From Pseudomonas aeruginosa PAO1 (GTDB lineage: Bacteria; Pseudomonadota; Gammaproteobacteria; Pseudomonadales; Pseudomonadaceae): 64,000 nt of DNA. The notes under the pieces were generated by a model, which was not told the origin of the DNA, made no database searches, and saw nothing but the letters and a program-made list of their open reading frames with translations. Shown here in pieces: positions 1 through 44,280 of the stretch. The stretch's first letter is position 1. Each line of letters opens with the position of its first letter. The translations under genes and the position numbers were made by a program. The stretch lies in the NCBI RefSeq assembly GCF_000006765.1, contig NC_002516.2. One strand, written 5' to 3'.

Positions 1-1
1 C

Positions 2-157
2 TGCGCGGCCTGCGCCAGCGGCCACCCCCAGGGCGAGCCGTGTCGCGACGCCGATTGCCCCTGTGGCGGCACCACCCGGCCCCAGGTGGCGGAGGATCGC
101 CAGCTGGACGACGCGTTGAAGGAGACCTTTCCCGCCAGCGACCCGATCTCGCCCTGA
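2..157 (+). CDS. Pseudomonas-type metallothionein, 3' part (5' end outside window)
   Basis: Frame from nt 2 reads CAACASGHPQGEPCRDADCPCGGTTRPQVAEDRQLDDALKETFPASDPISP*: Cys/His cluster plus the acidic C-terminal tail typical of Pseudomonas metallothioneins. Confidence 0.85.
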   Translation, partial: CAACASGHPQGEPCRDADCPCGGTTRPQVAEDRQLDDALKETFPASDPISP

Positions 158-167
158 GGAGCGTGCC

Positions 168-5926: not shown

Positions 5927-5953
5927 CATGCCCAGGATGAGGAGAGGAAACCG

Positions 5954-8083
5954 ATGAGCGAGCAGAACAACGAGCAGCGCAGCCAGGCGGCCGGCACCGA
6001 CACCGTCGACCGTGGCAACAGCAACGCCAAGCTGGAACAGCTGGAGGCCTATCGCGAGGACGCCACCGGAGAGGCCCTGAGCACCAATACCGGCACCCGC
6101 ATCGCCGATAACCAGAACACCCTGAAGGCCGGCGAGCGCGGACCGTCGTTGCTCGAAGACTTCATCATGCGCGAGAAGATCACCCACTTCGACCACGAGC
6201 GCATTCCCGAGCGCGTGGTCCACGCTCGTGGCTCGGCGGCGCATGGCTACTTCGAGGCCTACGAGGACCTCAGCGACCTGACCAAGGCCGGCTTCCTCGC
6301 CGAGGCGGGCAAGCGTACCCCGGTCTTCGTGCGTTTCTCCACCGTGCAGGGGCCGCGCGGGTCCGCGGATACGGTGCGTGACGTACGCGGCTTCGCCGTG
6401 AAGTTCTATACCGACGAAGGCAACTTCGACCTGGTCGGCAACAACATGCCGGTGTTCTTCATCCAGGATGCGATCAAGTTCCCCGACTTCGTCCATGCGG
6501 TGAAACCCGAACCGCACAACGAGATTCCCACCGGAGCGTCTGCCCACGACACCTTCTGGGACTTCGTTTCGCTGACCCCGGAGTCGGCGCACATGGTCAT
6601 GTGGCTGATGTCCGATCGCGCCATTCCGATCGCCTACCGCAACATGCAGGGCTTCGGCGTGCACACCTTCCGCCTGGTCAACGCGGCCGGCGAGAGCGTG
6701 CTGGTCAAGTTCCACTGGCGACCGAAGTCCGGGACCTGCTCGCTGGTCTGGGACGAGGCGCAGAAGCTCGCCGGCAAGGACCCCGACTTCAACCGGCGGA
6801 CCCTCTGGGAGGACATCGAGAAGGGCGACTATCCCGAATGGGAGCTGGGCCTGCAGGTGATCCCGGAGAACCAGCAGGACAGCTTCGACTTCGACCTGCT
6901 CGACCCCACCAAGCTGGTGCCCGAGGAGTTGGTGCCGGTAAGGGTGGTGGGGCGGATGGTACTCAACCGCAACCCCGACAATTTCTTCGCCGAGACCGAA
7001 CAGGTGGCGTTCCACGTCGGCCACGTGGTCCCCGGAATCGACTTCACCAACGACCCGCTGTTGCAGGGTCGGCTGTTCTCCTATACCGACACCCAACTGC
7101 TGCGCCTGAGCGGGCCGAACTTCAACGAAATCCCGATCAACCGCCCGCTGTGTCCGTTCCACAACAACCAGCGCGACGCGCCGCACCGGCAGACCATCAA
7201 CCGCGGCCGGGCTTCCTATGAACCGAACTCGATCGACGGCGGCTGGCCGAAGGAAACCCCGCCGGCGGCGCGCAACGGCGGCTTCTCCACCTACCACGAG
7301 CCGGTCAGCGGCAGCAAGCTGCGCAAGCGTGCCGACTCCTTCGCCGATCATTTCAGCCAGGCCGCATTGTTCTGGCACAGCATGAGCGAGGCCGAGCAGG
7401 CGCATATCGTCGCCGCCTACAGCTTCGAACTGTCCAAGGTCGAGCGGCAATCGATCCGTGAGCGCGAAGTCAACCAGATACTCCTCAACATCGATCCGCA
7501 ACTGGCCGCCAGGGTCGCGGCGAACGTCGGTGTGCAGCTCGCCGCGCCGGCCAACCCGACACCGCAGCCGAAGCCGTCGCCGGCGCTGAGCCAGATGAAT
7601 CTGCTGTCCGGCGACATCCGTTCGCGCAAGGTGGCGATCCTGATCGCCGACGGCGTCGCCGAGAGCGACGTCAGCGACCTGCGCGACGCGCTCCGCCAGG
7701 AGGGCGCGGACGCCAAGCTGATCGCGCCCAGCGCTTCGCCGGTGCAGGCTGAAAACGGCGCCGAACTGAGCCCTGAGGGAACCTGGGACGGCCTGCCGTC
7801 GGTAGCCTTCGACGCGGTCTTCGTGCCTGGCGGCGCGGCCAGCAGCCAGGCCATCGGCGCTGACGGGCGCGGCCTGCACTACCTGCTGGAAGCCTACAAG
7901 CACCTGAAGCCAGTGGCCTTCGCCGGCGATGCCCAGGCGCTGGCCAGCCAGCTTTCGTTGCCTGGCGACCCCGGCGTGGTGCTCGGCGCCACGGCCACCG
8001 ATGTCTTCCCCGGCCTGCGCCAGGCATTGATGCAGCACCGGATCTGGCAGCGCGAGGCGGCGACCAAGGCGATCCCCGCCTGA
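5954..8083 (+). CDS. katE: Large-subunit heme catalase HPII, 709 aa
   Basis: [38 protein letters not shown]; C-terminal DJ-1/GATase-like domain. Confidence 0.97.
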
Positions 8084-33887: not shown

Positions 33888-34072
33888 GTCATCCTCCGGT
33901 CGTACGTTGTCCTTGGCGTTGGTCGGTCGGACTCCGTCGCGCCGTGGCATGGGCGAAGTCCTTGCTAGGGGTGACCGGAGGGGAGCGCCGGAAGTTTAGT
34001 TTTTTTTACCGGCGGCTCGGCTTTCGAGAAGCCGCGCCAGGGGGTTGCAGGCGAGACGACGGGCGCAACGGG

Positions 34073-34196
34073 TTGCCGAATGCAAGGCTCGGCAGGGGCT
34101 TTCTTGCAAATTGCAAATATCAATTCGCCGCTTTGTTTTTCAACCTATTGATTTATAAGAAATTAATTTTCAAGAAGAATTGGTACGCCTTCTGCT
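34073..34196 (+). promoter_or_regulatory. sigma54-type promoter with IHF site and two palindromic upstream activator sites
   Basis: TGGTACGCCTTCTGCT (GG-N10-GC) at 34181-34196; AATCAATAGGTTG (WATCAA-N4-TTR, minus strand) at 34141-34153; TTGC-N5-GCAA at 34073-34085 and 34104-34116. Confidence 0.65.
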
Positions 34197-34254
34197 CGAA
34201 AGGGATGCGCCTGATTACCGGCGTCAAAGAATCTGATGAGACAGGAGGCCAGCA

Positions 34255-34620
34255 ATGCTAGATACCGATGAAAACGTGGTTGAGTACCTGGAAGAGCATT
34301 TCAAGGATGTGCGCGTCAGTTGCGAACCTCGCCCTGACGGCGCGTTGCTGGTGACCTTGCGTAATAACCAGGGCAAGCGCCTGATGAGCCGGGCGATCTC
34401 CGGCCAGGAGCAGAGCAGCCCGCTGTTGCTGAACCAGGTGCTGGAACGCATCCGCCGGGACCTGATCATCGACCAGGGGCCGTTGCAGACGCGCGACAGC
34501 GACTATTTCCGCAAGCGCATCGACCTGCTCACGTTCCGCGACAGCGACAACCAGCATCTCACTCATCGCAAGGTCCTGGTCGCCGGCGGCAAGCTGCGTA
34601 CCATGAGCCTGGCTCGCTGA
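34255..34620 (+). CDS. DUF3509-like hypothetical protein, 121 aa
   Basis: GGAGG RBS; PRPDGALLVTLRN and LNQVLERIRRDL pattern. Confidence 0.75.
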   Translation: MLDTDENVVEYLEEHFKDVRVSCEPRPDGALLVTLRNNQGKRLMSRAISGQEQSSPLLLNQVLERIRRDLIIDQGPLQTRDSDYFRKRIDLLTFRDSDNQHLTHRKVLVAGGKLRTMSLAR

Positions 34621-34737
34621 GCAGGCTGTTTCAGCTCCGGGTCGGTCAGTCGCCGACCCGGCCTTCCGACGCATGGTCCGAACCAAATCCGTCTTCGCCC
34701 CCTCCATCTAGAAGTCATCCCTACGATGGAGGCGGAC

Positions 34738-34917
34738 ATGCGTTTTCCCACTTCTGCATCATCGGGCGCGACAGCGACCACTCCACGCAACCCCTCGAGG
34801 GATCCGGACGAATATCCGGTTCCTGACCACGAAAGCCACGTCCCCCAGGAATTCCCGGAAGAGATTCCGATGGAACAGCCCAACGAAGAGCCCCTCTCGC
34901 CCATACCGGAGCCCTGA
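34738..34917 (+). CDS. Small Pro/Glu-rich peptide, 59 aa
   Basis: The ATG at 34726 carries GGAGG, the RBS for ATG 34738; MRFPTSASSGATATTPRNPSRDPDEYPVPDHESHVPQEFPEEIPMEQPNEEPLSPIPEP*. Confidence 0.6.
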   Translation: MRFPTSASSGATATTPRNPSRDPDEYPVPDHESHVPQEFPEEIPMEQPNEEPLSPIPEP

Positions 34918-34948
34918 ATGCCCGGTTTCCATCCAGGAGGAGCGGAAC

Positions 34949-36046
34949 ATGAGCGCAGACCCTCGGCAGAGACTGGTGGTGGCCCATAGTGTCGATCCCG
35001 CGGCCGCCGAACACGAAGTGCAGGGCAACCTGGCCCTGGCGCGCTGGCTGGCGGAAGTCCAGAAGCTGGAGTTCGGCGGCCGCTACGAACCCGAATTGCA
35101 CCAGCGAGGCCCCCTCTACCTGGTCCCGACCCGCACCCTGGTCGGCAGGGAGACCGCCGTGCGCCTGGGCGTGAACAGTGACGAAGATCTGCTCGGCGGT
35201 TTCGTCGAGCACGCGTTCATCGCCGGTAAGGCCATCGTCCATCCGCTGCCGCGCGGCGGCGTGGCGCCGGAAGGCTGGAACCCGCTGTTCGCGGAGAAGG
35301 TCCGCGACGTCGTGCTCAACGGCGTCAGCGTCTTCAGCCTGGCCGACGCACACCGCGCCGGCGCTCGCATGCTCGCCGAAGGACCGGTGCGGGCCAAGCT
35401 GGCGGAGGCCTGTGGCGGCCTCGGCCAGTACGTGGCGCACGACCTCGACGAACTGGACGCTTGGCTCGGCGGGCTGGAGGAGCGTCAGTTGGCGCAGGGC
35501 CTGGTACTGGAAGCCAACCTGGAGAGCATCGTCACCCACAGCGTCGGCCAGCTCCGGGTCAACGGTTTCCTGCTGAGCTACCACGGTCACCAGCACCAGA
35601 CCCGCAACGCGCGCGGCGAACTGGTCTATGCCGGCTCCGACCTGCTGGTGGCGCGCGGTGGCTACGCCGAGCTGCTGGCCCTGGACCTGGCCCGTGAGGT
35701 GCGCCAGGCCATCGAGTACGCGCGGATCTTCGACACCGCCGCGGCGATCTTCTTCCCCGGCTGCTTCGCCTCGCGGCGCAACTACGACATTGCCCAGGGC
35801 CGGGACGGCAACGGTCGGGAGCGCTTCGGCGTGCTCGAGCAGTCCTGGCGGGTCGGCGGCGCGAGCAGCGCCGAGATCGCCGCGCTGGAAGCCTTCCGCG
35901 CCGATCCGGGGCTGCCCGCGGTGCGCGCCGCGTCGTTCGAGATCCACGAAGACAAGCGCCTGCCGGACAACAGCCGGGTGATCTACCGCGGTCCCGACGA
36001 ACACGGCGACTTCCTGCTCAAGTATGCGATGACGGGGGAGGCATGA
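34949..36046 (+). CDS. DUF3182 family protein with ATP-grasp-like motifs, 365 aa
   Basis: PVRAKLAEACGGLGQYVAHDLDEL and GLVLEANL resemble ATP-grasp B-domain/hinge motifs; AGGAGG RBS. Confidence 0.75.
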   Translation: MSADPRQRLVVAHSVDPAAAEHEVQGNLALARWLAEVQKLEFGGRYEPELHQRGPLYLVPTRTLVGRETAVRLGVNSDEDLLGGFVEHAFIAGKAIVHPLPRGGVAPEGWNPLFAEKVRDVVLNGVSVFSLADAHRAGARMLAEGPVRAKLAEACGGLGQYVAHDLDELDAWLGGLEERQLAQGLVLEANLESIVTHSVGQLRVNGFLLSYHGHQHQTRNARGELVYAGSDLLVARGGYAELLALDLAREVRQAIEYARIFDTAAAIFFPGCFASRRNYDIAQGRDGNGRERFGVLEQSWRVGGASSAEIAALEAFRADPGLPAVRAASFEIHEDKRLPDNSRVIYRGPDEHGDFLLKYAMTGEA

Positions 36047-36819
36047 CGGCGAACAGCGAACGCATCCGCATCGGGGTCGGCGACGACCGGATCGAAGGCA
36101 CCTTCCTCAGCCCCCGGGCGAAGGTTCCCGGCGTGCTCTTCGTGCACGGCTGGGGCGGCAGCCAGCAGCGCGACCTGAAGCGCGCCCAGGGCATCGCCGG
36201 GCTCGGCTGCGTGTGCCTGACCTTCGACCTGCGCGGCCACGGCGCGGAAAGCGGGCGCCAGGCACTGGTGACGCGCGAGGACAACCTGCAGGACCTGCTC
36301 GCCGCCTACGACCGGCTGGTGGCCCACCCGGCCATCGACAGCGAGGCGATCGCGGTGGTCGGCACCAGCTATGGCGGCTACCTGGCGGCGATCCTCAGCC
36401 AGTTGCGCGCGGTGCGCTGGCTGGCCTTGCGGGTGCCGGCGATCTACCGCGACGAGGATTGGCTGACGCCCAAGCTGCTGCTCGACCGCGAGGATCTCAG
36501 CGAATACCGCAGCAGCCTGATCCCGGCCGCCAGCAACCGAGCCCTGCAGGCCTGCGCGGGATTCCGCGGCGATGTGCTGCTGGTGGAGTCGGAGTTCGAC
36601 AGCTATGTGCCGCACTCGACCATCATGAGTTTCCGCGCCGCCTTCCAGCAGACCCATTCGCTGACCCACCGGATCATCGACCACGCCGACCATGCGCTCA
36701 GCAGCGAGGCGGCGCAGGACGCCTATACCTCGATCCTGGTGGACTGGATCACCGAGATGGTGGTCGGCGAACGTCTCAGCATCACCCCAGCCTACGCCAC
36801 CATCCATCCGGCTTTCTGA
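36043..36819 (+). CDS. Alpha/beta hydrolase
   Basis: FVHGWGG, GTSYGG nucleophile elbow, ADHAL His; ATGA overlap with DUF3182. Confidence 0.9.
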   Translation: MTANSERIRIGVGDDRIEGTFLSPRAKVPGVLFVHGWGGSQQRDLKRAQGIAGLGCVCLTFDLRGHGAESGRQALVTREDNLQDLLAAYDRLVAHPAIDSEAIAVVGTSYGGYLAAILSQLRAVRWLALRVPAIYRDEDWLTPKLLLDREDLSEYRSSLIPAASNRALQACAGFRGDVLLVESEFDSYVPHSTIMSFRAAFQQTHSLTHRIIDHADHALSSEAAQDAYTSILVDWITEMVVGERLSITPAYATIHPAF

Positions 36820-36944
36820 ACGCTCCGCGACGGCGAGCCTCCCACCTTCCGTGGGTGCTGGTTGCTGCCCACGTTCCGTGCCGGCAGGCGCCGGCGCCGA
36901 CAGATGCGAGAAATCCCGGACAGCTCCGGGCCAAGGAGAGCGAA

Positions 36945-37397
36945 ATGAACCAGACCAACCTCGACGACACCCTCGACGTACTCAACGACCTGCTGCAAAC
37001 CAGCAAGGATGGCGAGGCCGGTTTCCACGCCTGCGCCGAGGACCTGCGCGACCCGCAGTTGAAGGCGGCGATGCTGGAGCAGAGCCGCGACTGCGCCGCG
37101 GCCGCCGACGAGCTGGAGCGGATCGTCCTGGAACTGGGTGGCAAACCCAAGGACAGCACCAGTTTCGCCGGTGACCTGCATCGGCGCTGGGTCGACCTGA
37201 AGTCACTGGTCACCGGCAAGGACGAAGAGGCGGTGCTCAACGAATGCGAGCGCGGCGAGGATGTCGCCAAGCACCGCTACCAGGCGGCGCTGGAAAAATC
37301 GCTGCCGGCGGAGATCCACCAGGTGATCGAGCGCCAATACCAGGGCGTACTCCGTCACCACGACCGGGTCCGAGCCCTGCGCGACGCCCGCGCCTGA
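36945..37397 (+). CDS. DUF2383 ferritin-like four-helix-bundle protein, 150 aa
   Basis: LNDLLQTSKDGEAGF, LHRRWVDLK, ECERGED; GAACGC-N16-TCCCA at 36818-36844. Confidence 0.88.
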   Translation: MNQTNLDDTLDVLNDLLQTSKDGEAGFHACAEDLRDPQLKAAMLEQSRDCAAAADELERIVLELGGKPKDSTSFAGDLHRRWVDLKSLVTGKDEEAVLNECERGEDVAKHRYQAALEKSLPAEIHQVIERQYQGVLRHHDRVRALRDARA

Positions 37398-37423
37398 GCC
37401 GACCCCGCGAGGAGGAGCGCGCC

Positions 37424-37633
37424 ATGAGCCAGTCCCTGGCTTTCCTGCTCATCGGCCTGGCCACGCTGGTGGGTTTCTACGACCTGTGGGCCTTCGTCAG
37501 CGTGTTCCGCAGCGATCGCAGCGTGAATTCGAAAGCCCTGTGGTCGTTGCTGATCGCGGTGCTGCCGGTGCTCGGCGTGCTGATCTGGGCGGTCGCCGGC
37601 CCGCGTGCGGCGACCGCCCGTCCTCGCGACTGA
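37424..37633 (+). CDS. PLDc_N-like small membrane protein, 69 aa
   Basis: KALWSLLIAVLPVLGVLIWAVAGP; GAGGAGG RBS. Confidence 0.8.
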   Translation: MSQSLAFLLIGLATLVGFYDLWAFVSVFRSDRSVNSKALWSLLIAVLPVLGVLIWAVAGPRAATARPRD

Positions 37634-41715: not shown

Positions 41716-43668
41716 ATGAAAACCACAAGAAAACCGAAAGTCCCCTTGAACCAGGCCACGCGCAACCGCCTGCTCGACGAAGCGGTCGACGACTACGCGA
41801 TCCACACCCTGGACAGCGCTGGCCATATCGCCAGCTGGAGCGCCGGCGCGGCGCGCCTGTTCGGCCACGACGCGAGCGAGATCCTCGGCCGCGACTACGC
41901 CTGCTTTCATACCCGCAAGGACCGCGACGCCGGCGTTCCGCAACAGGCGCTGCGCCAGGCGGATGCCGAGGGCCGCTTCGAGACCGAGGGCTGGCGGGTG
42001 CGCAGCAACGGCAAGCGCTTCTGGGCGCAGGTGGTGATCGACGCCATCCGCGACAGCCAGGGCCAGTTGCTCGGCTTCGCCCAGCTGATCCACGACCTCA
42101 GCGAAGGGCGCGCGGCCAAGGAGGCGCTGCGGCGCAGCCAGGAGCAGTTCCGCCTGCTGGTGCAGAGCGTTACCGACTACGCCATCTACATGCTCGACCA
42201 CCGCGGGCGGATCACCAACTGGAACCTCGGCGCCCAGCGGATCAAGGGCTACCTGCCGGAAGAGGTGATCGGCCGGCACTTCTCCTGCTTCTACACCCCC
42301 GAAGACCGCGAGGCCGGCGAACCGGCCCGCGGCCTGGCCGCCGCCGAACGCGAAGGGCGTTTCGAGAAGGAAGGCTGGCGGGTGCGCAAGGACGGCAGTC
42401 GCTTCTGGGCCAACGTGGTGATCGATCCGATCCGCGACAGCGATGGCCGGCTGATCGGCTTCGCCAAGGTAACCCGTGACATCACCCACCGGATCGAAGC
42501 CGAACGCGAACTGGAACGGGCCCGCCAGGAGCTGTTCCAGGCCCAGAAGATGGAGTCCCTGGGGCACCTCACCGGCGGCGTGGCCCACGACTTCAACAAC
42601 CTGCTGACGGTAATCATCGGCAGCCTCGGGCTGCTGAAGAAACGCCTGCCCGGCGACCAGCGCACCGCCGACCTCTTGCAGAACGCCCTGGAGGCCGCCC
42701 AGCGCGGCGCCAACCTGACCCAGCGGATGCTTTCCTTCGCCCGCAAGCAACGTCTCGATCCGCAGCCCTGCGCGATCCCCGACCTGTTGCGCGGGATGAC
42801 CGACCTGCTGATCCATTCCCTGGGACCGAGCGTATCGATCGAGACGCGCTTTCCCCTGGATCTCGACCTCGGCCTGACCGACGCCAACCAGCTCGAACTG
42901 TCCATCATCAACCTTGCCACCAACGCCCGCGACGCCATGCCCAACGGCGGGCGCATCGTCTTTTCCGCGAGCAACCAGCGGGTGCCGGCGGACAATCCCC
43001 ATCGCCTCGCACCGGGCAACTATATCTGCCTGAGCATCAGCGACACCGGCAGCGGCATGGACGAGGAAACCCTGCGCCGTGCGGTGGAACCCTTCTACAC
43101 CACCAAGGGAATTGGGCGTGGCACCGGGCTGGGCCTGTCGATCGTCGACGGCCTCGCCGAGCAGCTCGGCGGCCGGCTCACCCTGGAGAGCCAGCCGGGC
43201 GTCGGCACCACCGCGAACATCTGGATACCCGCCGTCCCGCGAACCCCGGAAAGCGCCCGTACGGGCAATGGCGCGACGCCGCAGCCGCCCAGCGAAAGCG
43301 AGCGGGTGCGCTTGTCCTGTCGAGTACTGGTGGTGGACGACGACCCGCTGGTGTTGAACAACACCGCGGCGATGCTGGAGGACCTCGGTTGCTCGGTACT
43401 CAAGGCCGACTCCGGCAGCCTGGCCCTGGAGATTCTCACGGCGACGCCGGAGCTGGACATCCTCCTGACCGACCAGGCGATGCCACGGATGAACGGCAGC
43501 CAGTTGGTGGAGCGGGTCATGGCCCAGGGCCGGCCACTGAAGATGGCCCTGGCCACCGGCTTCGCGGAAAAGATCGAAGGCGCGGCGGCACAGTTGCCCA
43601 AGCTGGCCAAGCCGTTCGGCCAGGAAGAGTTGTACCTGTTCCTGACCGGCACGCTGAAGGCCGGCTGA
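41716..43668 (+). CDS. Cytoplasmic PAS-PAS hybrid sensor kinase/receiver (start may be 41569)
   Basis: Two similar PAS-PAC repeats, GGVAHDFNNLL H-box, NLATNARDAM, DTGSGM, GTGLGL, VLVVDDD...LLTDQAMP receiver. Confidence 0.92.
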   Translation: MKTTRKPKVPLNQATRNRLLDEAVDDYAIHTLDSAGHIASWSAGAARLFGHDASEILGRDYACFHTRKDRDAGVPQQALRQADAEGRFETEGWRVRSNGKRFWAQVVIDAIRDSQGQLLGFAQLIHDLSEGRAAKEALRRSQEQFRLLVQSVTDYAIYMLDHRGRITNWNLGAQRIKGYLPEEVIGRHFSCFYTPEDREAGEPARGLAAAEREGRFEKEGWRVRKDGSRFWANVVIDPIRDSDGRLIGFAKVTRDITHRIEAERELERARQELFQAQKMESLGHLTGGVAHDFNNLLTVIIGSLGLLKKRLPGDQRTADLLQNALEAAQRGANLTQRMLSFARKQRLDPQPCAIPDLLRGMTDLLIHSLGPSVSIETRFPLDLDLGLTDANQLELSIINLATNARDAMPNGGRIVFSASNQRVPADNPHRLAPGNYICLSISDTGSGMDEETLRRAVEPFYTTKGIGRGTGLGLSIVDGLAEQLGGRLTLESQPGVGTTANIWIPAVPRTPESARTGNGATPQPPSESERVRLSCRVLVVDDDPLVLNNTAAMLEDLGCSVLKADSGSLALEILTATPELDILLTDQAMPRMNGSQLVERVMAQGRPLKMALATGFAEKIEGAAAQLPKLAKPFGQEELYLFLTGTLKAG

Positions 43669-43671
43669 GCC

Positions 43672-44280
43672 TCAGCGCAGGTACTCGCCGCTGCCGGCCA
43701 GGCTTTGCCCCCAGAGCTCGATGAAGATGAAGGCGGTGGTCAGCAGGGTCAGGAAGCCGACGCCGAGGATGCAGAAGGCGTAGAACAATGTCTGCCGCTC
43801 CTGCATGCGCATGAACAGCGGCAGGCCGGTGAACAGCAGGCGTACCGAGTAGGCGCAGGCAGCCGCCGCGGCCAGCAGCAGGAGGATCCGCCAGGGCACC
43901 AGGGCGACGATCCCGGCGAGCATCAAGGGCACGGCGATCGCCGTGGTGAAGGTCAGGCTGCCCGGTACGCTGGGGCGCGACGGCGTGCGGAACAGCACCC
44001 AGCGTACGAATAAGCCCATGATCACCACGCCGGCGACGAAGCCCAGGTAACACATCGTCGCCAGCAGCAGGGCGCTGCCGCTGGAGAGGTGTTGCACGCT
44101 GTCGTTGCCCGGCAGCGACCAGCCGACCTGGGTAGTGCCGATGAACAGGCAGGCCGCCGGCAGCAGCGGCAATAGCAACAGCGGAACGAGGAAGGCGAAA
44201 GGGTGATGGTCGTAGTCCTGGCGCAGACGAGGCCAGGCATTGGAGGGACTGATCAGTAGCCGAGCCATTTCGCGGGTCAT
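43672..44280 (-). CDS. Yip1 family membrane protein, 202 aa
   Basis: LLISPSNAW, five hydrophobic helices, YSVRLLFTGLPLFM; AGAGGTG RBS. Confidence 0.8.
   Translation of the reverse strand: MTREMARLLISPSNAWPRLRQDYDHHPFAFLVPLLLLPLLPAACLFIGTTQVGWSLPGNDSVQHLSSGSALLLATMCYLGFVAGVVIMGLFVRWVLFRTPSRPSVPGSLTFTTAIAVPLMLAGIVALVPWRILLLLAAAAACAYSVRLLFTGLPLFMRMQERQTLFYAFCILGVGFLTLLTTAFIFIELWGQSLAGSGEYLR

What the first reader, a model, noticed from the sequence alone, without database searches (positions are those of the whole stretch)
34738..36819. Peptide + ATP-grasp-like DUF3182 + alpha/beta hydrolase: possible RiPP or writer/eraser system
Seen: a 59-aa ORF with a Thr/Ser-rich N-half (TSASSGATATT) and Asp/Glu/Pro-rich C-half ends 31 nt before DUF3182, which is coupled (ATGA) to a Ser hydrolase. 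DUF3182 shows ATP-grasp-like K-x5-GG-x-G and LVLE motifs. Known: ATP-grasp ligases crosslink Ser/Thr/Lys to Asp/Glu in graspetides or add Glu tails (RimK). Inference: the peptide is the ligase substrate and the hydrolase removes a leader or reverses the ester/amide bond. Alternatively the pair makes and degrades a storage polyamide.
Basis: partly seen in the sequence, partly recalled or inferred. Interest (0 to 1): 0.7.

Follow-up and report, generated by a model that had tools for sequence, protein, structure and literature searches.

The report
Stress-induced ATP-grasp ligase plus hydrolase pair
The three genes are real, but the small acidic peptide joined a widely conserved, still uncharacterised ligase-plus-hydrolase gene pair only in the Pseudomonas aeruginosa lineage, so this is very unlikely to be a peptide natural-product (RiPP) system.

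Summary
A 59-aa ORF (34738-34917) ends 31 nt before DUF3182 (34949-36046), which overlaps an alpha/beta hydrolase (36043-36819) by ATGA. The window matches the P. aeruginosa PA2166-PA2172 stress island.

- **DUF3182 is an ATP-grasp enzyme.** The AlphaFold model has pLDDT 96 and all top-50 PDB neighbours are ATP-grasp. This was already published in 2015.
- **The hydrolase is its constant partner.** It lies directly downstream in 91/91 Pseudomonas loci, 4/4 alpha/beta-proteobacterial replicons and 59/61 metagenome loci. Its Ser-Asp-His triad is invariant.
- **The small ORF is a real gene.** Codon-position differences are 7/7/24, there is an in-frame indel, and a 22-aa core is conserved across species.
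- **The small ORF is not tied to DUF3182.** It is absent upstream of DUF3182 in every other taxon checked. In five related lineages its 44-46-aa core homologue, without the Thr/Ser-rich segment, follows a PAS hybrid kinase. In two of these no DUF3182 lies within 10 kb.

Best reading: an AlgU/RpoS stress-induced two-enzyme module (ATP-dependent ligase plus serine hydrolase) with an unknown, probably non-peptide, substrate. The relocated small acidic stress-protein gene is now its first cistron.

The parts
34637..34661 (+). GC-rich hairpin (9-bp perfect stem CCGGGTCGG/CCGACCCGG, 7-nt loop) after the DUF3509 gene. It may act as a terminator or insulator, but it has no U-tract.
   Evidence: the terminator scan found none with a T-run
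34680..34707 (+). Candidate AlgU (sigma-22/sigma-E type) promoter GAACCA-N17-TCCAT. Both boxes are invariant and the 17-nt spacer is variable between the window and the divergent clade L005. A GAACC(A/T) box also precedes the small-protein gene in four other lineages.
   Evidence: The PA2167(-500/+50)-lacZ fusion gave 72:21:470 Miller units in WT:algT:mucA backgrounds (PMC3372973). The consensus is recalled from memory and the transcription start is not mapped: inference.
34698..34735 (+). Inverted repeat CCCCCTCCATC / GATGGAGGCGG that would sequester the Shine-Dalgarno sequence of the small ORF if it is transcribed. This is an alternative or additional reason for conservation of the -10-like block.
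   Evidence: RNA fold -19.2 kcal/mol, z = -3.0; analogous CCTCCGC/GCGGAGG pairing is visible in L089
34738..34917 (+). Gene for a 59-aa acidic, Pro/Glu-rich, probably disordered small protein. Its conserved core is (R/H)ES-x-(V/I)P-x-(E/D)FPEE(V/I)PM-x-QP-x-EEP. The N-terminal Thr/Ser-rich 20 residues are lineage-specific.
34949..36046 (+). DUF3182 (PF11379) ATP-grasp enzyme, the PA2167 orthologue. It has the ATP-binding Lys150, the Gly-rich loop 156-159, the hinge Glu188, and the SRRNYD 275-280 and LEQSWRVGG 296-304 motifs.
   Evidence: PMC4431377
36043..36819 (+). Cytoplasmic alpha/beta-fold serine hydrolase, the PA2168 orthologue, translationally coupled by ATGA. It has an HGWGG oxyanion motif and the triad Ser109 (GTSYGG), Asp186 and His217.
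41716..43668 (+). PAS-PAS-HisKA-HATPase-REC hybrid kinase (PA2177-like). In five related lineages the small-protein gene lies immediately downstream of this gene; here that slot is empty.
43672..44280 (-). Yip1-family membrane protein gene, convergent on the kinase. It is the other constant neighbour of the small-protein gene in relatives.

Best explanation
The functional unit is a two-gene module. It consists of a DUF3182 ATP-grasp enzyme and a translationally coupled cytoplasmic Ser-Asp-His alpha/beta hydrolase, conserved as an adjacent pair across gamma-, beta- and alpha-proteobacteria.

In P. aeruginosa these are PA2167-PA2168. They lie in the PA2134-2192 stress island and are switched on by the envelope-stress sigma factor AlgU (sigma-22), together with RpoS/quorum-sensing-linked stress genes.

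Mechanism (inferred). The ATP-grasp enzyme uses ATP to activate a carboxylate as an acyl-phosphate and joins it to an amine, or another nucleophile, on a small molecule or on a generic cellular target. The hydrolase either reverses or turns over that bond, or supplies or trims the substrate. This logic resembles glutathionylspermidine synthetase/amidase more than a RiPP system.

The 59-aa peptide is a genuine but independent gene. It encodes a small, acidic, proline-rich, probably disordered stress protein restricted to the P. aeruginosa/nitroreducens/jinjuensis lineage. Ancestrally it lies behind the PA2177-type hybrid kinase with its own sigma-E-like promoter box. In P. aeruginosa it moved in front of PA2167, where it is now probably the first cistron of the AlgU-driven transcript.

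Shown: the gene identities, the fold, the conservation of the pair, the coding status and mobility of the small gene, and the regulation (from the literature). Inferred: the chemistry, the promoter assignment and co-transcription.
For: **Fold**
- PF11379 match of 484 bits.
- AF2 model with pLDDT 96.2 and pTM 0.93.
- All top-50 Foldseek PDB hits are ATP-grasp enzymes: biotin carboxylase, Ddl, PurK, LysX/ArgX, RimK, CPS and PGM1.
- hhalign places K150, the Gly loop and E188 on the ATP-binding strand, loop and hinge of DdlB and biotin carboxylase.
- Published recognition of the fold: PMC4431377.

**The conserved pair**
- The hydrolase starts -4, -11 or -14 nt relative to the end of DUF3182 in 87 of 91 Pseudomonas loci, and 13 nt after it in the other 4.
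- It is adjacent in Microvirga, Agrobacterium, Sphingobium and Burkholderia.
- It is adjacent in 59/61 diverse metagenome loci.
- No third gene recurs in more than 6 of 84 loci.
- The triad and the HGWGG motif are invariant in 9 orthologues.
- PDB 3KSR is a close homologue, E = 3e-79.

**Peptide independence**.

**Peptide is coding**.

**Regulation**
- The PA2167 promoter fusion is AlgU-dependent and induced 20.7-fold by D-cycloserine at 60 min (PMC3372973).
- PA2167 is induced 15-22-fold and PA2168 21-29-fold by a LolCDE inhibitor, and the authors note PA2167-PA2173 as a co-induced cluster (PMC7685553).
- PA2167 and PA2168 change together in the pppA-ppkA study (PMC3224232).
Against: - No substrate, product or activity is known, so the chemistry is pure inference from the fold class.
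- In P. aeruginosa the peptide is adjacent and probably co-transcribed, and in three of the five relatives it lies within 3-5 kb of the module. A lineage-specific functional link therefore cannot be excluded.
- The AlgU promoter assignment rests on a consensus recalled from memory and on a conservation pattern. The same conserved block also forms an SD-sequestering hairpin, which would require a transcription start further upstream.
- PA2167 transposon mutants showed no major phenotype in the one study read.
- One distant DUF3182 (37% identity) lacks the hydrolase and sits beside a radical-SAM gene, a LanM gene and LanA-like ORFs. GECCO weights PF11379 as associated with biosynthetic gene clusters.
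Confidence: 0.6

Rival explanations
1. aeruginosa lineage. The small acidic protein is a substrate or carrier of the DUF3182 ligase: graspetide-like Ser/Thr-to-Asp/Glu esters, RimK-like Glu addition, or a LysW-like amino-group carrier. The hydrolase removes a leader, releases the product or erases the mark.
For: - The peptide is immediately adjacent (31 nt) and probably co-transcribed in thousands of P. aeruginosa contigs.
- In three of the five related lineages it lies in the same stress island, 3-5 kb from the module.
- It is very acidic, with a conserved Glu/Pro-rich core.
- Small acidic proteins next to ATP-grasp ligases have precedent (LysW/LysX, S6/RimK; from general knowledge).
- LysX/ArgX and RimK are among the structural neighbours.
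Against: - The module is conserved without any such peptide in more than 200 loci.
- The peptide family's constant neighbours are a hybrid kinase and Yip1, and two lineages have no DUF3182 within 10 kb.
- The Thr/Ser-rich half is absent from the 44-46-aa core of the homologues, and there is no Lys.
- The C-terminus is not conserved: PEP, PER, PEQ and PPQRH.
- There is no Cys for a LysW-type zinc ribbon.
- No graspetide ligase is listed among the top-50 structural neighbours.
Confidence: 0.1
2. DUF3182 is a carboxylase-type ATP-grasp enzyme (biotin carboxylase/PurK/CPS-like) that activates bicarbonate as carboxyphosphate, rather than an amide ligase. The hydrolase processes the carboxylated or carbamoylated product.
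For: - The best Foldseek hit is biotin carboxylase, and several databases name homologues 'biotin carboxylase'.
- Burroughs et al. report sequence affinity to the carbamoyl-phosphate synthase/BtrJ clade.
- The E297-x-S-x-R301 motif resembles the E-x-N-x-R of that clade (the motif comparison is from memory).
Against: - No biotin carrier, carboxyltransferase or amidotransferase partner lies nearby in any locus.
- TM-scores to Ddl, PGM1, PurK and biotin carboxylase are all similar, 0.45-0.58.
- The same clade contains true amide ligases (BtrJ, L-amino-acid ligases; general knowledge).
Confidence: 0.12
3. The pair synthesises and degrades a storage or protective polyamide, cyanophycin-like or poly-amino-acid, during stress.
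For: - The ligase-plus-hydrolase pairing is conserved.
- The pair lies next to glycogen/trehalose storage genes and is expressed in stationary phase and under stress.
Against: - DUF3182 is a single 365-aa ATP-grasp domain without the Mur-ligase-like second module of cyanophycin synthetase.
- The hydrolase is an S9/dienelactone-hydrolase-like alpha/beta hydrolase, not an S51 cyanophycinase.
- The glycogen-gene neighbourhood is confined to the P. aeruginosa group.
Confidence: 0.05

Closest known systems
DUF3182 / PF11379 (IPR021519), recognised as an ATP-grasp family by Burroughs, Zhang & Aravind 2015 (PMC4431377)
   Same: There is a full-length match of 484 bits. The predicted fold, the ATP-binding Lys, the Gly-rich loop and the hinge Glu all agree.
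   Different: Nothing differs: this protein is a member. The family has no known substrate, and its invariant hydrolase partner is not mentioned in the text I read.
PDB 3KSR, 'putative serine hydrolase' (structural-genomics entry)
   Same: It aligns with the window hydrolase over residues 3-248 (E = 3e-79) and shares the HGWGG, SYGGYL, VE-E-D and ADHAL motifs.
   Different: 3KSR has a solved structure, but the entry name gives no function. So it adds a fold and no chemistry.
Graspetides (omega-ester-containing RiPPs such as microviridins; ATP-grasp MdnB/MdnC type), from general knowledge
   Same: An ATP-grasp enzyme is encoded next to a short ORF containing Ser/Thr and Asp/Glu.
   Different: - The short ORF is not conserved with the enzyme.
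- The Ser/Thr segment is not conserved.
- The enzyme's nearest structural neighbours are biotin carboxylase, Ddl, PurK and LysX rather than graspetide ligases.
- The partner is a hydrolase, not a leader peptidase/transporter or GNAT.
Glutathionylspermidine synthetase/amidase (GspSA), from general knowledge
   Same: An ATP-grasp amide ligase is obligatorily coupled to a hydrolase that reverses the bond, and the system is used in stress physiology. This is the closest functional analogy for a ligase/hydrolase module.
   Different: In GspSA the two activities are fused in one protein and the hydrolase is a CHAP-type Cys amidase. Here there are two overlapping genes and a Ser alpha/beta hydrolase. 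No sequence relationship beyond the ATP-grasp fold was shown.
LysW/LysX (ArgX) amino-group carrier system and RimK/ribosomal protein S6, from general knowledge
   Same: A small, very acidic protein is encoded next to an ATP-grasp ligase. LysX/ArgX and RimK appear among the structural neighbours.
   Different: The peptide has no zinc ribbon (no Cys) and no conserved C-terminal Glu tail, and it is not linked to the ligase outside P. aeruginosa.

Membership tests
ATP-grasp superfamily (DUF3182, PF11379) | Match to the family HMM above the gathering score | tested here: met
   484.1 bits against a cut-off of 26, covering profile positions 1-354 of 354
ATP-grasp superfamily (DUF3182, PF11379) | Three-domain ATP-grasp fold | tested here: met
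   The AF2 model has pLDDT 96.2. All 50 best PDB matches are ATP-grasp enzymes, with probability 1.00 and E down to 7e-10.
ATP-grasp superfamily (DUF3182, PF11379) | ATP-binding Lys on a beta-strand, followed by a Gly-rich flexible loop and a hinge Glu | tested here: met
   K150 and E188 are invariant and G157 is at least 90% conserved in 71 homologues. hhalign aligns them with PVIVK..GSSVG/..IEKWL of DdlB and PVIIK..GGGGRG/..MEKYLE of biotin carboxylase (low hhalign probability, E = 0.05 and 0.004).
ATP-grasp superfamily (DUF3182, PF11379) | Mg2+/acyl-phosphate site (an E-x-N-x-R-like motif plus an upstream acidic residue) | tested here: inconclusive
   D280, E297 and S299 are at least 90% conserved and R301 is invariant. 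Equating them with the canonical motif rests on memory, not on a superposition.
ATP-grasp superfamily (DUF3182, PF11379) | ATP-dependent carboxylate-nucleophile ligation | not testable with these tools
   This needs an enzyme assay.
Graspetide (ATP-grasp-modified RiPP) | The precursor peptide gene co-occurs with the ATP-grasp gene in homologous clusters | tested here: not met
   No homologue and no recurrent acidic small ORF lies upstream of DUF3182 in 80 Pseudomonas species loci, P. jinjuensis, four plasmid/chromid loci or 71 metagenome loci. Peptide homologues occur without DUF3182 within 10 kb.
Graspetide (ATP-grasp-modified RiPP) | Conserved core motif with Ser/Thr (or Lys) donors and Asp/Glu acceptors | tested here: not met
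   The Thr/Ser-rich residues 2-20 vary within P. aeruginosa clades and are absent from the 44-46-aa core of the homologues, which have 1-2 Ser, 0 Thr and 0 Lys.
Graspetide (ATP-grasp-modified RiPP) | Ligase of the MdnB/MdnC type | tested here: inconclusive
   No entry described as a graspetide ligase appears in the top-50 structural neighbours. No direct comparison was run.
Graspetide (ATP-grasp-modified RiPP) | Dehydrative macrocyclisation (-18 Da steps) of the peptide | not testable with these tools
   This needs mass spectrometry.
RimK/S6 or LysX/LysW-type protein-tail ligase systems | Acceptor protein with a conserved C-terminal Glu tail (and, for LysW, a zinc ribbon) | tested here: not met
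   The C-termini differ...PIPEP...PMPER...PRPEQ and ...PPQRH. There is no Cys.
Cyanophycin synthetase/cyanophycinase | CphA architecture (ATP-grasp plus a Mur-ligase-like module) with an S51 peptidase partner | tested here: not met
   The protein is a single 365-aa PF11379 domain. The partner matches Peptidase_S9, Abhydrolase_6, Hydrolase_4 and DLH, not S51.
Alpha/beta-hydrolase fold serine hydrolases | Family HMM matches, a G-x-S-x-G nucleophile elbow and a Ser-Asp-His triad | tested here: met
   Peptidase_S9 scores 48.6 bits (cut-off 22.6), and Abhydrolase_6, Hydrolase_4 and Abhydrolase_1 are also above their cut-offs. S109 in GTSYGG, D186 and H217 are invariant in 9 orthologues from gamma-, beta- and alpha-proteobacteria. 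The protein is homologous to PDB 3KSR, E = 3e-79.

The most novel reading that the evidence does not exclude
In the P. aeruginosa lineage the relocated 59-aa acidic protein has been recruited as a dedicated acceptor or carrier for the DUF3182 ligase. This would be a protein-templated modification or a LysW-like carrier pathway induced by envelope stress, with PA2168 as the releasing or erasing hydrolase. It would be a new kind of ATP-grasp/small-protein system that evolved by gene relocation.
Probability: 0.08. Interest if true: 0.8.

Novelty: new member of a known kind. Interest (0 to 1): 0.35.

Why it matters
PA2167-PA2168 are among the more strongly induced unknown genes when the P. aeruginosa cell envelope is damaged: 15-29-fold with a LolCDE inhibitor, and AlgU-dependent. 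The same ligase-hydrolase pair is conserved across three classes of proteobacteria, yet it has no known substrate.

Three results sharpen how the system should be studied.
- The pair is the conserved unit.
- It is an ATP-grasp enzyme plus a Ser hydrolase.
- The neighbouring peptide is a separate, mobile small-protein gene.

The practical consequence is to look for a stress metabolite or a generic protein mark by metabolomics or proteomics of the two deletion mutants, not for a RiPP.

The work also documents a real small-protein family that is inconsistently annotated. It is 44-59 aa, acidic and proline-rich, has no Pfam model, and is associated with the PA2177-type hybrid kinase locus.

Tried and rejected
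- **Single-sequence AF2 of DUF3182.** It gave a useless model (pLDDT 33). Repeating it with a 71-sequence alignment gave pLDDT 96.
- **First genome-contig scan with the single protein.** It found nothing. The alignment-based scan worked but returned only Pseudomonas. I reached other taxa through plasmid tblastn and a metagenome scan seeded on a distant member.
- **A recurrent 38-aa ORF ('VQNAG..VVQNKTG..LA') upstream of DUF3182 in the P. fluorescens lineage, considered as an alternative precursor.** Rejected. Only two TCGTGCA(A/G)AAT repeats and a TTGGCCTGATCTCTGCAC block are conserved and the rest is free to vary, so these are DNA-level regulatory motifs.
- **Natural DUF3182-hydrolase fusions as Rosetta-stone evidence.** The only fusions (610-623 aa) are single-contig P. 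aeruginosa variants, consistent with an indel at the ATGA overlap. The 617-aa distant protein P0197 has no hydrolase domain.
- **RiPP context of a distant homologue (radical SAM + LanM + LanA-like ORFs).** None of 80 further metagenome loci has LanM or radical-SAM homologues, so I treat it as an outlier.
- **Sequence and motif scans.** Sequence search of DUF3182 against the PDB found nothing, and the profile search gave only marginal hits. The Rfam and sigma-70/terminator scans of 33900-37500 found nothing relevant.
- **A third conserved neighbour.** None was found in 84 diverse loci. ORF calling in high-GC DNA was noisy.
- **A second copy of the peptide core in the window.** None was found.
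Full report
**1. What is there**

The window around 34-39 kb is the Pseudomonas aeruginosa-type stress island next to the glycogen genes. On the minus strand lie glgA-, treZ- and malQ-like genes. On the plus strand lie:
- DUF3509, 34255-34620;
- a 59-aa ORF, 34738-34917;
- DUF3182, 34949-36046;
- an alpha/beta hydrolase, 36043-36819;
- DUF2383, a PLDc_N mini-protein, a hemerythrin and an M42 peptidase.

The closest database relatives of DUF3182 are P. aeruginosa proteins at 97-99% identity. So these are the PA2167 and PA2168 orthologues, with the small ORF in front.

- the 31-nt gap;
- the ATGA overlap;
- K150-x5-GG-x-G and LVLE185-188;
- a GGAGG Shine-Dalgarno sequence 5 nt before ATG 34738.

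**2. The small ORF is a real gene**

It is called as a 59-aa protein on more than 1000 P. aeruginosa contigs, though it is only sometimes named.

Against a divergent clade (L005, whose DUF3182 is 88% identical), the ORF is kept at 79% amino-acid identity. Differences at codon positions 1/2/3 are 7/7/24, and the only indel is 3 nt and in frame. The intergenic DNA upstream carries 9-nt and 1-nt indels.

A profile search found 44-46-aa homologues, some with longer predicted forms, in P. nitroreducens, P. jinjuensis and unnamed Pseudomonas. They share a 22-residue core, (R/H)ES-x-(V/I)P-x-(E/D)FPEE(V/I)PM-x-QP-x-EEP. Within this core the nucleotide differences are again concentrated at third positions, for example 4/2/17 and 3/3/14.

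The protein has 14 Pro and 9 Glu, pI 4.2, no Cys and no Lys, and no Pfam or NCBIfam match. Its GC3 of 0.63 is low for this genome. I note this but consider it outweighed by the conservation evidence.

**3. DUF3182 is an ATP-grasp enzyme**

With a 71-sequence alignment, AlphaFold gave pLDDT 96.2 and pTM 0.93. All 50 best Foldseek matches in the PDB are ATP-grasp enzymes: biotin carboxylase, D-Ala-D-Ala ligase, PurK, GAR synthetase, LysX/ArgX, RimK, CPS and the peptide ligase PGM1. All have probability 1.00.

Profile alignment puts K150, the Gly-rich loop and E188 on the ATP-binding strand, loop and hinge of E. coli DdlB and biotin carboxylase.

K150, E188 and R301 are invariant in 71 homologues of 35-62% identity. 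G157, D280 and E297 are conserved in at least 90% of them.

This is not new. [quoted passage not shown]

**4. The hydrolase is the constant partner**

The downstream protein matches Peptidase_S9, Abhydrolase_6, Hydrolase_4 and Abhydrolase_1 above their thresholds. It aligns over residues 3-248 with PDB 3KSR, 'putative serine hydrolase', at E = 3e-79.

Ser109 (GTSYGG), Asp186, His217 and an HGWGG motif are invariant in nine orthologues from three proteobacterial classes.

A hydrolase orthologue follows DUF3182 directly on the same strand in:
- 91 of 91 Pseudomonas loci, with overlaps of 4, 11 or 14 nt in 87 and a 13-nt gap in 4;
- 4 of 4 annotated replicons of Microvirga, Agrobacterium, Sphingobium and Burkholderia;
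- 59 of 61 diverse metagenome loci that have enough downstream sequence.

No other gene recurs in more than 6 of 84 diverse loci. The conserved unit is therefore the two-gene module.

**5. The peptide is not part of that unit**

No homologue of the peptide lies upstream of DUF3182 in any of the following:
- 80 other Pseudomonas species and P. jinjuensis;
- four alpha/beta-proteobacterial loci;
- 71 metagenome loci.

Often there is no room for one. The intergenic region is 172 nt in P. fluorescens, and in Burkholderia the upstream gene ends 72 nt before DUF3182.

Where the peptide family exists outside P. aeruginosa, it always sits between a PAS-PAS-HisKA-HATPase-REC hybrid kinase and a convergent Yip1 gene. 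This holds in P. nitroreducens (L089-L091), P. jinjuensis (L100), a metagenome contig (L101) and two further Pseudomonas genomes (L185, L186).
- In three of these lineages the DUF3182 pair lies 3-5 kb away in the same island.
- In L185 and L186 there is no DUF3182 or hydrolase within 10 kb on either side.

In the window, the kinase orthologue (41716-43668) abuts the Yip1 orthologue (43672-44280) with three bases between them, and the window holds only one copy of the core motif. So the small gene was relocated in the P. aeruginosa lineage.

The Thr/Ser-rich N-terminal 20 residues, on which the graspetide idea depends, are specific to P. aeruginosa, variable between its clades, and missing from the homologues' core. 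The C-terminus is not conserved either.

**6. Regulation**

Literature evidence:
- A PA2167(-500/+50)-lacZ fusion, which contains the small ORF, gave 72:21:470 Miller units in wild type, algT and mucA backgrounds.
- PA2167 was induced 20.7-fold after 60 min of D-cycloserine. The PA2167 transposon mutant had no major phenotype (PMC3372973).
- PA2167 and PA2168 were induced 15-29-fold by a LolCDE inhibitor, and the authors noted that PA2167-PA2173 cluster as a possible envelope-stress operon (PMC7685553).
- Both genes change together within the PA2134-2192 locus in a pppA-ppkA mutant (PMC3224232).

Sequence evidence:
- Upstream of the small ORF, two blocks are invariant between the window and clade L005 while the 17 nt between them vary. 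They read GAACCA-N17-TCCAT. This resembles the AlgU/sigma-E consensus as I recall it.
- A GAACC(A/T) box also precedes the small gene in all four other lineages examined.
- P. jinjuensis and P. nitroreducens have GAAC(T/C)(C/G)-N16-TCGAGT just upstream of DUF3182 itself.

I infer that the small gene moved together with its own stress promoter, and that this promoter now also feeds PA2167-PA2168.

There is a competing reading. The -10-like block pairs with the Shine-Dalgarno sequence of the small ORF (34698-34708 with 34725-34735; -19.2 kcal/mol, z = -3.0). That pairing would matter only on transcripts starting further upstream. Without a mapped transcription start I cannot decide between the two.

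**7. How it most likely works**

- **Shown:** an ATP-grasp enzyme with intact ATP-site residues; an obligatory, translationally coupled, cytoplasmic Ser-Asp-His hydrolase; co-induction by envelope and stationary-phase stress.
- **Inferred:** the ligase activates a carboxylate as an acyl-phosphate and joins it to an amine or another nucleophile, on a small molecule or on a generic cellular target. The hydrolase turns the product over, or prepares or trims the substrate.

The nearest functional analogy is glutathionylspermidine synthetase/amidase (general knowledge), not a RiPP.

The neighbourhoods elsewhere are stress-flavoured but variable:
- Hsp20, hemerythrin, DUF4142, Kup and PAS kinases;
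- in 69-75 of 80 P. fluorescens-lineage loci, a DJ-1/PfpI-AraC regulator upstream and LPG-synthase-TM, PLD and EEP genes downstream.

They give no substrate clue.

**8. Rivals**

- **The peptide as a lineage-specific substrate or carrier.** It keeps about 0.1 probability because of adjacency and co-transcription in P. aeruginosa.
- **A carboxylase-type reading.** It rests on the biotin-carboxylase top hit and the CPS-clade affinity, but there is no biotin carrier or transferase partner anywhere.
- **A cyanophycin-like polymer.** It lacks the required architectures.

One distant DUF3182 (37% identity, no hydrolase partner) lies beside radical-SAM, LanM and LanA-like genes, and GECCO lists PF11379 as associated with biosynthetic gene clusters. 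None of 80 further metagenome loci repeats that context.

**9. Verdict**

The ATP-grasp identity and the ligase-hydrolase coupling are supported.

What remains is an uncharacterised but clearly delimited two-enzyme stress module (PA2167-PA2168), plus a genuine, mobile small-protein gene. This is worth a metabolomics or biochemistry follow-up but is not a surprising new kind of system. Interest is 0.35, and the novelty call is 'new member of a known kind'.

Noticed in passing
window 1-160 (+); L156 5568-5864, L163 5556-5864, L180 5656-5961: A small hydrophilic ORF running in from the left edge of the window ends '...DRQLDDALKETFPASDPISP*'. The same 'EE(T/S)FPASDP(V/I)S' motif occurs once or twice in roughly 100-aa hydrophilic ORFs just upstream of DUF3182 in 3 of 71 metagenome loci. 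It has no Pfam match, and no paper in the library contains 'FPASDP'. It may mark a widespread family of small stress proteins. Its resemblance to the E-x-FP-x-x-x-P of the 59-aa protein is too weak to call.
   Followed up: partly
L009-L088 (P. fluorescens-lineage loci), about 170 nt upstream of DUF3182: In 69-75 of 80 loci, a DJ-1/PfpI-AraC (GATR-type) regulator gene precedes DUF3182. The intergenic region holds two conserved TCGTGCA(A/G)AAT repeats and a TTGGCCTGATCTCTGCAC block with sigma-54-like GG-N10-GC spacing. The regulation there therefore differs from the AlgU-type control in P. aeruginosa.
   Followed up: partly
window 34698-34735; L089 about 5945-6000; L101 about 5975-6035: The Shine-Dalgarno sequence of the small ORF can pair with an upstream CCUCC-containing segment (z = -3.0 in the window). 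Similar anti-SD/SD pairings are visible upstream of the homologues in P. nitroreducens and in a metagenome contig. This might block translation on read-through transcripts.
   Followed up: partly
window 34738-34917: GC3 of the small ORF is 0.63, against 0.82-0.91 for all neighbouring genes. This is unusual for a conserved gene in this genome.
   Followed up: no
L094/L095 1179-2294 and flanks: A distant DUF3182 (37% identity) has no hydrolase partner. It is convergent with a radical-SAM/SPASM-like gene and lies next to two LanA-like ORFs (C-termini rich in Cys/Ser/Thr/Gly) and a LanM lanthipeptide synthetase. The context was not repeated in 80 other metagenome loci.
   Followed up: partly
proteins P0002, P0004, P0007 (P. 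aeruginosa, 610-623 aa): A few P. aeruginosa contigs encode DUF3182 fused in frame to the hydrolase, as expected from an indel at the ATGA overlap. One such protein is in NCBI under the name 'biotin carboxylase'.
   Followed up: partly
window 36043-36819 versus 34949-36046, compared with L009-L088: The hydrolase is more conserved than the ligase. It is at least 70% identical between P. aeruginosa and the other Pseudomonas loci, against 52-57% for DUF3182.
   Followed up: no
alignment A2, profile positions 24-96: The N-terminal domain profile of DUF3182 gives weak hits (E about 6e-4 to 1e-3) to the N-terminal domain of ribosomal protein uL10. This is probably a shared small alpha/beta fold or chance.
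   Followed up: no
protein P0296 (59 aa, 3 contigs): This variant of the small protein has residues 20-35 replaced by unrelated sequence while both ends are intact. The pattern fits two compensating frameshifts or an assembly error.
   Followed up: no
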